A stretch of DNA of 64,000 bases, taken from positions 22,568,001 to 22,632,000 of the forward strand of contig NC_088860.1 in assembly GCF_963853765.1 (NCBI RefSeq), written 5' to 3'. The translations under genes were made by a program, and so were the position numbers. The notes beneath the pieces are model-generated. The model ran no database searches and was not told the origin of the DNA. It saw nothing but the letters and a program-made list of their open reading frames with translations. The DNA comes from Magallana gigas (taxonomy: Eukaryota). Below are positions 45,331-49,329 of the stretch, in pieces. The stretch's first letter is position 1. Each line of letters starts with the position of its first letter.

Positions 45331-45648
45331 AGGTGCTCGTGGACAGATATAAAGGGTTTTTAACGATGATAAATAAAAAATATGGGAATTGAAATACATG
45401 TATTTGTAAGCAAATGGTTTTATGTCAATTTTGTTCTTTAAAGATTATTTTATGATGCTGTAAATATTTACGACTTTGTCGTTAAGTTCTTTTGTAAAAT
45501 GCAGCCCGGATATTAGAAATACCTATCATTTATCATTAAAGAATACATACCGAAACTTCATCTCGAGTGCAACTCAATATTATCTCGAACGGCTCTTGTT
45601 TATTTTAAGAGTTATCACGCGCCTTGGCTTCTCCATTCGGCAAAAGCA

Positions 45649-48600
45649 ATGGCTGCCGAAGGGTTAATAAAATACGTAACATTGATCTTAGGAGTTTTTA
45701 CTTTGTACGTATCTGCAAAAAACCAAGAAGGTAAGAGACAGACATTTTGAATTATTTCAGGTTTTCACTTAGAAAATAAGAGCAAGTCTTGGTGTAGTAT
45801 CTCTTGTCGAATATATACATGTCTATAGATGGTCCAGCTATAGTACAACATTTTCCTTTCACTAAGCAGTGTTGCATTTAGGGCAAAGTTTATAGTTACA
45901 CCTGAAAAGATATAGATAAGAAAGTTACATATATATGAGAAATACAATGTACGTCTATTAGATTCATCTGCTTCTTGTCAAATCCAGTTGTATTATATTT
46001 TGTTAGACTATAGCAATGTTTGCGGGAGCTGTCATACCGTTATAACCCCCGTGTGTGCATTTGGTTACTATTTTTACATGTTAGTCAGAATTTAAAATAT
46101 CTTGCGCCTCTCAGTGAAACATTTCAGCTCCTCAGTGTTCAGCAGGAAAGTTTATGGTTCAAGGTAATTGCCATTCAGTGAGTGTATATATACACCAAAC
46201 ATATTCATTTTTTTCTGCAAAACAACAGATAAATCATTGACGGGAAACGATTTGGTTCTTGAAACCGAAAGGAAATTGCTATAGATAATACCAGAAAGTT
46301 ATACATGCATAACTTGATTTCCGATACAGCACAATTTGTGCAAGACGTTGCTTTAGATATAATGTATCTGAGGTTTTGAGTAATTTTTACACGAAACATC
46401 ACATGGCAATATCTGAAGTTAGAAATCTACAGATGAATGACAACTTATGATACCGGTATGTGTTACCGTAGCAAACGATAATTTCTGTTTTGGTCTCACA
46501 GACTGCAGGGATGGTTACGGAAACTTGGTGAAGAATGCCACATCGTATAACCCGTATGTTATCGACAAAACTGACCCGTGTGTAGAATGTACCTGTTTGG
46601 TAGGTGTAAAACGATATCAATTGCATGAGCGAACTCTAGCTCATTCTAAAAAAAATCTATTCATTCTCATTTTTTTTTTCACTTTTCATTTAGTATATTT
46701 TATATTAAGGACACTAACAAAATCATATTTGAATGACAGAACGGCGCTATCACATGTGCGAAAAGACCGGAAGAAGAATGCGAAAAGCCGAAAAATCTCT
46801 GTGGAAAAAAGAAAGACGGATCGCGTAAACGTAAAAAGAGGAAAAGAAAAAGGAAAACTAAAAAGACAGCTAGAAAGGGGCGTACCAGAAGGAGAGGTAA
46901 AACAAAAGGTAGGAGTGTTGCGTTGCAGTTATGTACAATATATCTATCATTGTCTTTCTCCAGATTCAGTTTTCAAGGCTCGATGATAAAGACCGTCTTG
47001 TAAACTTTTTCTACACTATGATATCAAATGTTTGTTGAACATTTTGCTCTGAGAAGTTATGTACATGAACATGTACAGTACTAACACGGATATAGTGAAA
47101 TTGCATGTCATTTTTACATCTTTTAAAACGATTGCTTCCAATCAGTATTTTCCTAAGTTATACATTTTCTCTGTTGAGGAGGCTAGATGGTCAACACATT
47201 AACCATCAGATCTACCTTAAATTTTCAGAAATGATTTTTTAAACTATAAACTTTTATTTGGTTAAGAAAAAATCATATATTTATGCTTTTGAAATTTGAA
47301 TATTTTCTTATACATTGCATCTATATACATGTATATATAGAGCTCTTCTTTAGGATATCAATAAGTAGCGTAAAAATGGTCCCGGCCATCCAGCATCTTT
47401 TTTATGCATATTTATGTTTGAATTACATTGCAGACAAAGTAAAAATTAAAAAAATTAAGCTTTTGTTTGATTTTAGGTAAAAGGAGAAAGAAAAACAGGA
47501 GGAAAGAAAAAAAACGATCAATGAAATGCCGCAGTGTTAAAGTTTCCCACAATGTGACAATGTCTGACAAACTGTGTCCAGCTATTCCCGCGCTTTCTTT
47601 GCCGCCAGATGGCGCTCTGTCGTGTCATTATAATAATTTATGCTTACCTAGAGGGACCGAGTACATCGTTTACAGGAAGCAGATATCCCATGGAAAACAT
47701 ACTGATGACAACACTTTGATAATAGCATTTGATCATTTAAAAACTGAGATGGTTGAAATTTGGACATATCTCATTAACAAAGGTAAATAAACCATTAACT
47801 GAGATGGTTGAAATTTGGACATATCTCATTAACAAAGGTAAATAAACCATTATGCTTTTTGATGAAAAGTGTCAACCTGATTCCATAATTTCTATTAATA
47901 GTCTGTTCCCGTCGCTTTTTGAAGAATTTTAAATATAGAATACATATAAATTCATTTATTTTAACCTGGAAAAATGGACAGGCACGGAAATTGATTTCTT
48001 ACGGAGATTTACAAAGGGAAATATTTACATCTTTTTTTCCCATTTGAAAGTTGTTGGAACACCTTGCACAATTTTTCAACGTTATCATCTTTGTTATTTT
48101 GGTTGTGGATTAAAATGTAAAGCGGTAAAAAGGGCGTTTCAAAACTGAAAATCTGGACTTTTTTCACGTGCTTTTTCAAAAATTAAATTTTTTTAACGTA
48201 GTTTGGACATACATGTTTTAATGATTATCGGAAGATTAAGCAAACAGTGGTAAAATCAGAAACTTTGCAAAGCGTATAGAATCAAATTCCGATCAAGAAC
48301 TTTCATTTTCTCAAAATCATACTTATATACTATATGTGTTCAAAATGAACACGATTTTATCTAAATTTACAAAGAGATGTATACATTGTAGCATACTGTT
48401 ATAAGACATAAAGTTGACCATCTTCATTGCACGTATAAACGTTTTAATTAAAATCTTGAAGAAAGTTTGCAAAAATAAATGAAAATGTTGCATTGAAAAA
48501 AAATATAAAGAATATTAATATTTGAGTGAAATTAATGTCCATATAAACATGTTTTTGTTTTGCGTCATATTTGGTATAGATAGTTTAGTTACATGTAATT

Positions 48601-49329
48601 GCTATGTACATCGGTCATAATTACGTATCGTTGCTCAGGTGATCGTTGTGGCCCACAGCCCCTATGTTTTAATTTGGTGAATGTCTTCACTTCCAGAGAA
48701 GATCAAGGAGAGAAAGGAGCTGGACAGATGCCCGTCCCCCTCCCTCAGAGCCCAGCTTAAGACCCCGGACGCCATTTTGGGCGCCGCTAGTTCAAGTAAG
48801 TGACACAGGGCAGGCGCTATTGACAATACTCACAGGGGATAGTGCCGTAGTAATCATTGGCGAACGTATAAATCCTTATAAACTTCTTTTAAATAATATA
48901 ACGTAAACAACTACATATATTTATGAACATGTATTCTGCATCTTCGCTAGCCAAGGGTTTCTGATCCGCACCGCTTCTCACGAACCCTATACGAAATTTT
49001 CTTTATCATTTAAGCAATCACAATAAAACTCAAAGGAAAAACAAAAATACAGAATATAATTATCGAAGTTAATAATTTCTTGAAACCAAAGCACTTTGAT
49101 GGCAATTTATATTGAACAACTTTTAACCAGATGAGTTTCATGCCAGCCTTATTTCTTTTTAATCATGATAGAATCAGTGAAGGATTTCCAAAGAAAATTA
49201 CGAAGGGGACTGAAAGACTGTGAGAAGAAAAAGAAGGGATGCCGCTTAAGAACGGTGCGCAAACACTTGGTCTGTTTTGAACTCGAAGAGATTCCAAAGA
49301 CAAAACTGCTGAGAAACTGTAATAGTTGA
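45649..49329 (+). CDS. Tandem paralog B of the short chordin-like unit, 303 aa (signal peptide, truncated VWC, polybasic tract, CHRDL C-terminal domain)
   Basis: Exons 45649-45730 (MAAEGLIKYVTLILGVFTLYVSAKNQE), 46502-46599, 46740-46908, 47477-47782, 48697-48795 and 49172-49329 are GT-AG with an open frame (912 nt). Intron phases are the same as in unit A. Confidence 0.85.
47742..47851 (+). repeat. Perfect 55-bp tandem duplication spanning an exon end and 5' splice site
   Basis: AACTGAGATGGTTGAAATTTGGACATATCTCATTAACAAAG|GTAAATAAACCATT at 47742 and 47797. Confidence 0.95.
47897..48290 (+). mobile_element. Degenerate copy of the ~460-bp MITE family
   Basis: Starts ATAGTCTGTTCCC and shares ACGGAGATTTA.AA.GGGAAAT.TTTACAT and downstream blocks with 49475-49953. 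Confidence 0.55.

What the first reader, a model, noticed from the sequence alone, without database searches (positions are those of the whole stretch)
45601..49329. Tandem duplication of only the internal-promoter half of chordin-like creates a new secreted gene and an alternative 3' module
Seen: six exons plus promoter-proximal sequence (TTTTAAGAGTT.TCACG) mirror 38851-42267 with the same phases and an intact frame, with clear amino-acid divergence (WHP to YNP, different basic tract and C-terminus). Acceptor 46502 is also phase 1, so exon 38194-38238 could splice to either module. Inference: a modular system with up to four products (long-A, long-B, short-A, short-B), and evidence that the VWC1/2-less unit has a function of its own, since it was duplicated and kept intact.
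Basis: partly seen in the sequence, partly recalled or inferred. Interest (0 to 1): 0.72.

Follow-up and report, generated by a model that had tools for sequence, protein, structure and literature searches.

The report
Truncated chordin-like duplicate gene in oyster
Next to the Pacific oyster's chordin-like gene lies an old, expressed, selectively maintained copy of only its back half, starting at an internal signal-peptide exon; databases list it as an uncharacterised gene, and I found no sign that it serves as an alternative 3' end of the parent gene.

Summary
Unit B (45649-49329) mirrors unit A (38924-42267): six exons, identical phases, all GT-AG, open frames of 303 and 307 aa. Exons are 77-90% identical and introns do not align.

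B is a real gene. RNA contigs from three studies join B1-B2-B3-B4, B4-B5 and B5-B6 at the predicted sites. B equals RefSeq LOC105329198 (XP_011428685.3). It is also tandem to A in an independent C. angulata assembly and present in a third oyster species.

It is under constraint. A/B dN/dS is 0.30. Against the third species, B exons 1-3 carry 0 of 49 indels (12.7 expected) and are 94.6% identical against 88.5% for non-exon sequence.

C. virginica has one copy with the same leader exon and promoter motif inside the intron. So the internal start predates the duplication, which arose in the Magallana lineage; B has since evolved faster (33 vs 12 unique residue changes).

The "alternative 3' module" (38238 to 46502) is phase-compatible but unsupported. 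All contigs reaching B exon 2 come from B1, a full long-A mRNA ends in poly(A) at about 42600, and no long-B protein or annotated isoform was found. Rare junctions were not testable.

Verdict: an ordinary partial tandem paralogue, tidy but modest.

The parts
45603..45621 (+). B promoter-proximal motif TTTTAAGAGTTATCACGCG; core TTAAGAGTT..CACG.G is invariant in A, B, B of another species and C. virginica
   Evidence: the longest RNA contig starts at 45631
45649..45730 (+). B exon 1: ATG plus signal-peptide-like leader MAAEGLIKYVTLILGVFTLYVSAKNQE, 82 nt, ends in phase 1
   Evidence: joined to exon 2 in RNA contigs of X1, X3 and X7
46502..46599 (+). B exon 2: first half (SD1) of the third VWC module, YNP in place of WHP
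46740..46908 (+). B exon 3: end of SD1 plus Lys/Arg tract. Main donor after 46908; alternative donor after 46896 gives the 299-aa RefSeq isoform X2
47477..47782 (+). B exon 4: end of the basic tract and start of the Cys-rich C-terminal domain
47742..47852 (+). Exact 55-bp x2 tandem duplication of the exon-4 end plus its donor; the RNA joint is laid at the first-copy donor (47782), and a contig ends there
   Evidence: (also in C. angulata L010)
48697..48795 (+). B exon 5
49172..49329 (+). B exon 6 with stop codon; RNA contigs continue into the 3' UTR to at least 49519
38852..38870 (+). A promoter-proximal motif TTTTAAGAGTTGTCACGTG
38924..39011 (+). A leader exon (alternative first exon inside the chordin-like intron), 88 nt, phase 1
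   Evidence: P0027, a 307-aa Ensembl model; intact in another species
40051..42267 (+). A exons 2-6 (40051-40148, 40450-40645, 40780-41076, 41465-41563, 42122-42267), shared by the long and short A forms; poly(A) at about 42600
38194..38238 (+). Linker cassette exon of the parent gene (phase 1 to 1). It joins to 40051 in mRNA and is skipped in RefSeq isoforms X3/X4. No evidence that it joins to 46502

Best explanation
B is a stand-alone gene (RefSeq LOC105329198, 'uncharacterized protein'). It arose in the Magallana (Asian Crassostrea) lineage by tandem duplication of the 3' part of the chordin-like gene LOC105329200. The copied part began at a pre-existing internal promoter and signal-peptide leader exon.

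B is transcribed from its own promoter and spliced into a 303-aa product, or 299 aa when the donor 12 nt upstream is used. The product has four parts: a signal peptide, the SD1 half of the third VWC module, a Lys/Arg tract of about 60 residues, and the Cys-rich chordin-like C-terminal domain.

Shown here: the homology, the transcription and splicing, the presence in three species, the constraint, and the faster evolution of B.

Inferred: the protein is secreted and held on sulfated matrix or cell-surface glycans by the basic tract. It may modulate BMP/Tsg-type interactions through the SD1 half-module and the C-terminal domain, without the two N-terminal VWC modules of the long form. The duplication would thus have given the short isoform a separate gene with its own regulation.
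For: Structure and homology.

Copy number: only two copies in the genome.

Transcription: RNA contigs from three studies carry all five B junctions. Single contigs span B1 to B4, starting at 45631 and 45646.

Annotation: B's exon translations match XP_011428685.3 (P0015) by eye. C. angulata has the orthologue LOC128182411, in tandem after A in an independent assembly.

Third species: B exons 1-3 are intact, and the same contig carries sequence matching window 42801-43013, downstream of A's poly(A) site. Run SRR27362817 holds both A and B.

Constraint: A/B dN/dS is 0.30 (Fisher p = 6e-12). Between species, B exons are 94.6% identical against 88.5% for non-exon sequence (p = 6e-4). B exons 1-3 carry 0 of 49 indels where 12.7 are expected (P = 3e-6). 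All cysteines invariant across the aligned homologues of the C-terminal domain are kept.

Timing: C. virginica has a single copy, with no second copy within 10 kb either side and no VWC1/2 relic in the gigas spacer. It carries the leader exon and motif. The tree groups (A,B) at 100/99 as sister to C. virginica. A and B share the loss of the SD2 half of VWC3, which three other genera keep.

Literature: SD1 suffices for BMP-2/Tsg binding in chordin-family VWC modules (PMC6270503, citing Fujisawa 2009).
Against: Secretion, glycan binding and any BMP or Tsg interaction are untested. The VWC remnant scores below Pfam's cut-off (17.7 vs 27.6 bits) and has lost the conserved Trp.

Between species, dN/dS for B exons 1-3 is 0.6 and not significantly below 1.

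B accumulates residue changes faster than A (33 vs 12), which fits relaxed constraint as well as a new function.

Gene conversion could make A and B look younger than they are: exon 5 has dS of only 0.14, and hybrid contigs exist.

The raw-read RNA run sampled (X21) had almost no reads on B, so expression level, tissue and strand are not measured.
Confidence: 0.85

Rival explanations
1. Modular system: transcripts from the upstream promoter also splice exon 38194-38238 to acceptor 46502. B exons 2-6 would then serve as an alternative 3' module (long-B) beside short-B.
For: The phases fit: both exon ends are phase 1 and end in GAAG|gt. The parent gene splices variably, with a cassette linker exon and four RefSeq isoforms. 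Contigs drop rare variants, and 327 loose-end rows were not shown.
Against: In three runs the contigs through B exon 2 continue unbroken into B1. A competing junction of real abundance would be expected to split them (my inference from how such contigs are built), and no loose end at 46502 was listed. Long-A mRNA is polyadenylated at about 42600, roughly 3 kb before B1. No protein cluster of 255-812 aa joins the N-terminal half to B. RefSeq lists no such isoform among those shown for C. gigas or C. angulata.
Confidence: 0.07
2. A larger segment, or the whole gene, was duplicated, and the 5' exons of the downstream copy were later deleted. B's start at the leader exon would then be secondary.
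For: Introns and spacers of A and B no longer align at all, so the original breakpoints are unreadable. The spacer is full of repeats and differs in length between species.
Against: The 3.4-kb spacer has no tblastn trace of VWC1/VWC2 exons at E <= 10, beyond chance-level short matches, while the same query finds all five upstream exons. Homology between A and B starts about 100 nt upstream of the ATGs. The third species has an even shorter spacer.
Confidence: 0.1
3. B is an uncollapsed allele or an assembly artefact.
For: An old C. gigas assembly carried an extra fragment model (XP_019919410.1, LOC105319654) in B's cluster.
Against: dS is about 0.6 and the introns are unalignable. The same tandem order is seen in an independent C. 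angulata assembly. Both paralogues occur in one run of a third species. A and B have distinct transcripts.
Confidence: 0.01
4. B is a transcribed but decaying copy with no function of its own.
For: B evolves faster. It has lost the VWC Trp. Between-species dN/dS is 0.6 and not significant. Its exon-4 end plus donor is duplicated in tandem.
Against: The frame is open in three species. B exons 1-3 have no indels where 12.7 are expected, and exons are more conserved than introns. Every cysteine that is invariant in the C-terminal-domain alignment is kept. Since the split from the third species, B exon 2 changed 1 of 32 residues against 6 of 32 in A.
Confidence: 0.04

Closest known systems
Vertebrate chordin-like proteins CHRDL1/CHRDL2 (neuralin/ventroptin, CHL2)
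   Same: The parent gene A has a signal peptide, three VWC modules arranged 2+1 and a Cys-rich C-terminal domain. RefSeq names some isoforms 'chordin-like protein 2'. The predicted fold of B's C-terminal domain has as its nearest ESM Atlas neighbour a chordate 'Chordin-like protein 1' cluster carrying PF19548 CHRDL_1_2_C (TM 0.52, 109 residues, rmsd 2.8).
   Different: B lacks VWC1 and VWC2 altogether. In both A and B of Magallana, VWC3 has lost its SD2 half, and a long Lys/Arg tract follows it. PF19548 is not detected by sequence. No solved structure matches.
Short VWC-only BMP modulators and single-VWC fragments (CV2 VWC1, CHL2 VWC1/3 SD1 constructs)
   Same: A single VWC module, and within it SD1, can bind BMP-2 or Tsg (PMC6270503). 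B keeps an SD1-like Cys pattern.
   Different: B's SD1 has Tyr in place of the conserved Trp. Binding is untested, and B carries an extra domain and a polybasic tract.
Partial tandem gene duplicates that begin at an internal or alternative promoter and become independent genes
   Same: The retained exons have identical phases. B has its own first exon and promoter motif, is transcribed independently, and has diverged asymmetrically.
   Different: Nothing unusual for this class. This comparison rests on my general knowledge and not on a tool result.

Membership tests
Chordin-like (CHRDL1/2) family | Signal peptide followed by three VWC (CR) modules | tested here: not met
   Met by parent A (P0020: Pfam VWC, 3 stretches, 58.7 bits) and by C. 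virginica P0012 (70.2 bits). B (P0009/P0014) has one partial stretch of 17.4-17.7 bits, below the 27.6-bit cut-off, covering profile positions 9-45 of 57.
Chordin-like (CHRDL1/2) family | C-terminal CHRDL_1_2_C domain (PF19548) | tested here: inconclusive
   No Pfam hit even at E <= 10 for nine homologues. However, the AF2 model (pLDDT 77, pTM 0.77) has a chordate CHRDL1 cluster with PF19548 as its best Atlas neighbour (TM 0.52).
Chordin-like (CHRDL1/2) family | Binds BMPs and antagonises signalling | not testable with these tools
   Needs binding or reporter assays.
VWC domain (PF00093) | Full ten-Cys module with SD1 and SD2 and the conserved Trp | tested here: not met
   The alignment shows the CPxLxC...CCxxC half missing in A and B but present in C. 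virginica, Ostrea and Saccostrea. B has SYNP where A has SWHP.
Functional tandem paralogue (as opposed to allele, artefact or pseudogene) | Divergence beyond allelic level and presence in independent assemblies or species | tested here: met
   dS is 0.6 and introns are unalignable. C. angulata shows the same tandem order. A third species holds both copies.
Functional tandem paralogue (as opposed to allele, artefact or pseudogene) | Transcribed and correctly spliced from its own first exon | tested here: met
   All five junctions appear in RNA contigs from three studies.
Functional tandem paralogue (as opposed to allele, artefact or pseudogene) | Purifying selection | tested here: met
   A/B omega is 0.30 (p = 6e-12). 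In the B lineage, exons are more conserved than introns (p = 6e-4), and B exons 1-3 have 0 of 49 indels against 12.7 expected (P = 3e-6).
NTR/TIMP module (lead from the language-model search) | OB-fold NTR structure | tested here: not met
   The feature score of 0.90 is only a lead. Foldseek against the PDB found no match at E <= 0.001. VIA-align against 48,161 chains gave a best Z of 4.2, and that match is not an NTR.

The most novel reading that the evidence does not exclude
The locus is dynamic in two ways that my evidence does not exclude. First, in some tissue or stage the upstream promoter does splice 38238 to 46502, giving a long form with B's module. Second, A and B still exchange sequence. 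The hybrid contigs (B 5' exon 4 joined to A 3' exon 4 and intron 4) and the A-like allele class of B exon 5 would then be real recombinant or copy-number haplotypes, not assembly chimeras.
Probability: 0.15. Interest if true: 0.5.

Novelty: new member of a known kind. Interest (0 to 1): 0.33.

Why it matters
The duplication is a natural experiment. A form of a chordin-like BMP modulator without VWC1/2 was copied as a unit with its own leader and promoter. It has been kept open, indel-free and expressed in several oyster species. This argues that the short secreted form does something on its own.

That gives workers on mollusc BMP signalling or shell formation a concrete target: the SD1 half-module, the polybasic tract and the CHRDL-type C-terminal domain.

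Otherwise it is a routine lineage-specific partial paralogue that genome annotation already lists. No paper in the searched library mentions it.

Tried and rejected
- Pfam on single exon translations gave nothing useful.
- A representative-library search with B exon 4 found only 8 hits, mostly oyster fragments. Two large hits, one with DUF7933/DUF11 repeats and one with fn3/NHL repeats, look like chance matches.
- The word search with B exon 4, and with the first 120 residues of B, returned only genomic read-through ORFs. It therefore could not test long-B at fragment level.
- Exact look-ups of the Ostrea, Saccostrea and Ensembl short-A proteins found no contigs. Synteny in those genera and transcript support for short-A were not checked here.
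- The TIMP/NTR lead was rejected by fold searches.
- Spacer-to-spacer and 3'-flank comparisons found only dispersed repeats.
- The raw-read run X21 gave almost no coverage of B.
- Spliced models of the window were never joined. Window exons were searched and compared one by one, dN/dS was summed per exon with split codons dropped, and full-length proteins came only from database ids.
- The N stretch at 37297-37441 was left unfilled.
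Full report
**Observation.** The window is G000:C8:22568001-22632000 of a 564-Mb, 29-contig oyster assembly. Public proteins that match it are named Magallana/Crassostrea gigas.

I read both stretches and defined the exons by script.
- Unit A: 38924-39011, 40051-40148, 40450-40645, 40780-41076, 41465-41563, 42122-42267 (924 nt, 307 aa).
- Unit B: 45649-45730, 46502-46599, 46740-46908, 47477-47782, 48697-48795, 49172-49329 (912 nt, 303 aa).

All introns are GT-AG, the exon-end phases are 1,0,1,1,1 in both units, and neither unit has an internal stop. 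blastn aligns exons 1, 4, 5 and 6 at 77-90% identity (best E = 3e-72) but aligns no intron. Exons 2 and 3 are recognisable only as protein, at 59% and 53% identity.

Exon 38194-38238 is 45 nt and runs phase 1 to phase 1, so it is frame-compatible with both acceptors. A search of the whole assembly with B exon 4 finds only A and B.

**What B is.** RNA contigs of three runs from three studies (X1, X3, X7) were laid on 44600-49900.
- They show the joints B1>B2, B2>B3, B3>B4, B4>B5 and B5>B6 at the predicted sites.
- The B1>B2 joint is written 45727>46500 with one letter between, which is the predicted 45730|46502 junction plus an A>G variant at 45728.
- Single contigs run from 45631 or 45646 through exons 1-4. 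Introns have zero depth.

The protein searches return B as XP_011428685.3 (P0015, 303 aa). Its sequence matches the exon translations by eye. It is gene LOC105329198, 'uncharacterized protein'. A second isoform of 299 aa uses the donor 12 nt upstream, at 46896.

A is LOC105329200, with isoforms of 470, 462, 455 and 447 aa; some are named 'chordin-like protein 2'. The two shortest skip the 38194-38238 cassette. A 307-aa short-A model exists only in Ensembl/UniProt (A0A8W8IQA4, P0027).

A Logan RNA contig (L011, SRR24489167) is a complete long-A mRNA. It runs 31994-32225, then the four exons of VWC1 and VWC2, then 38193-38238, then A exons 2-6, and ends in a poly(A) run at about 42600.

**Not an artefact, not neutral.**
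- *Independent assembly.* In C. angulata the locus is collinear with window 36000-50000 at about 95% identity, with A followed by B.
They also carry sequence matching window 42801-43013, downstream of A's poly(A) site.
- *Both paralogues together.* The same run set, and in one case the same run (SRR27362817), holds A with an intact leader exon. The duplication therefore predates that split.
- *Selection between A and B.* Nei-Gojobori counts were summed exon by exon with split codons dropped. They give dS 0.60, dN 0.18 and omega 0.30 (Fisher p = 6e-12).
- *Selection within the B lineage (window vs third species).* Exons are 94.6% identical against 88.5% for non-exon sequence (p = 6e-4). All 49 alignment gaps fall outside the 349 exon bases, where 12.7 would be expected (P = 3e-6). 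dN/dS for exons 1-3 alone is 0.6 and not significant.
- *Conserved cysteines.* B keeps every cysteine that is invariant across the nine aligned homologues of the C-terminal domain.

**Origin.** The C. virginica locus (L003) has a single copy and nothing B-like within 10 kb on either side. Only one protein cluster each was found for C. virginica, Ostrea edulis and Saccostrea cucullata.

Inside the C. virginica intron before the VWC3 exon lies an 82-nt, phase-1 exon encoding MAAELLLKLTVLILWTFVLLVSGQDGT. It is preceded by TTAAGAGTTATCACGTGAC. The core TTAAGAGTT..CACG.G is invariant in A, B, B of the third species and C. virginica. So the internal leader and its promoter element are older than the duplication, and the copy begins with them.

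The 3.4-kb spacer between A and B shows no trace of VWC1/VWC2 exons. However, because all neutral sequence has decayed, an originally larger duplication cannot be excluded.

A maximum-likelihood tree of the shared region puts A and B together (100/99) as sister to C. virginica. The B stem is 0.30 long against 0.15 for A. With outgroups, B has 33 unique residue changes against 12 for A (p = 0.002). A and B share the loss of the SD2 half of VWC3, which the other three genera keep.

**The 'alternative 3' module'.** I found no support for it.
- Contigs through B exon 2 enter from B1 in all three runs. No loose end at 46502 was among those listed.
- Long-A mRNA ends about 3 kb before B1.
- No cluster of 255-812 aa combines the N-terminal half with B.
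- The RefSeq isoforms listed for the two species include no such form.

This evidence is negative and limited. Contigs hide rare forms, fragment-level protein searches returned only genomic ORFs, and the read tools were exhausted. I put the reading at about 7%.

**Likely function (inferred).** The leader looks like a signal peptide by inspection: a hydrophobic core YVTLILGVFTLYV followed by V-S-A. The half-VWC corresponds to subdomain SD1. [quoted passage not shown] B has Tyr where the conserved Trp sits.

An AlphaFold model of the C-terminal 175 residues was built from a nine-sequence alignment (pLDDT 77, pTM 0.77). It has no solved counterpart: Foldseek found nothing at E <= 0.001, and the best VIA-align Z is 4.2. 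Its best ESM Atlas neighbour is a chordate chordin-like 1 cluster with the PF19548 domain (TM 0.52). Pfam does not detect that domain by sequence.

My best reading is a secreted, glycan-tethered modulator of BMP-pathway interactions that works without VWC1/2. It has been split off from the short isoform into a gene of its own.

**Novelty.** The gene models are public, and the kind of event is well known. No paper in the searched library names these loci, and the papers that mention mollusc chordin-like genes do not treat this duplicate. My tests agree. I checked the leader's conservation only in Crassostrea virginica and two or three Magallana species, not in four genera.

**Housekeeping.** The window's spliced models were never joined or typed. 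The N stretch at 37297-37441 was left as it is. No step needed referral.

Noticed in passing
L004 (ERR13913593), L005 (ERR13868562); window 47607-47653 / 40904-40950: DNA contigs (proteins P0001, P0038, P0053) join B intron 3 and the 5' half of B exon 4 to the 3' half of A exon 4 and A intron 4. The switch lies inside a 47-nt run that is identical in A and B. This is either a k=31 assembly chimera or a real recombinant or unequal-crossover haplotype.
   Followed up: partly
window 48697-48795 vs 41465-41563: Exon 5 has dS of only 0.14 between A and B, against 0.5-1.3 for the other exons. About 30 nt of flanking intron also align. B has two allele classes here: KIKERKELDR in the window, and KIKERQVLAK in other gigas and angulata sequences, the latter nearer to A. 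This suggests local gene conversion.
   Followed up: partly
window 47742-47852: An exact 55-bp x2 tandem duplication copies the end of B exon 4 together with its 5' splice site. It is also present, with a decayed third copy, in C. angulata (L010). The RNA joint is laid at the first-copy donor.
   Followed up: yes
window 46896 / 46908: Two in-phase donors 12 nt apart in B exon 3 give the 299-aa and 303-aa RefSeq isoforms. The RNA contigs laid here use 46908.
   Followed up: yes
window 44600-45400 and 49380-49900: Dispersed repeats with very high RNA-contig depth (up to about 10^5) flank B. Copies also lie at 55300-58100. They account for the spacer length difference from the third species.
   Followed up: no
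window 40450-40645 and 46740-46908; alignment: The SD2 half of the third VWC module (CPxLxC...CCxxC) is missing in both A and B of Magallana, but present in C. virginica, Ostrea edulis and Saccostrea cucullata. This is a lineage-specific truncation that predates the duplication.
   Followed up: partly
L012 (SRR27362810), matching window 37442-41102: Between C. gigas and the third species, A's leader exon and exon 2 changed 12 of 61 residues against 4 of 59 in B. So recently the parent copy is the less conserved one in this part.
   Followed up: partly
model m58dbac0ef33a (B residues 129-303): The Cys-rich C-terminal domain folds confidently, as a beta sheet plus helices, but has no match among solved structures. 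Only predicted chordin-like 1 models resemble it.
   Followed up: partly
window 37297-37441: A masked N stretch begins inside the second VWC1 exon of the parent gene.
   Followed up: no
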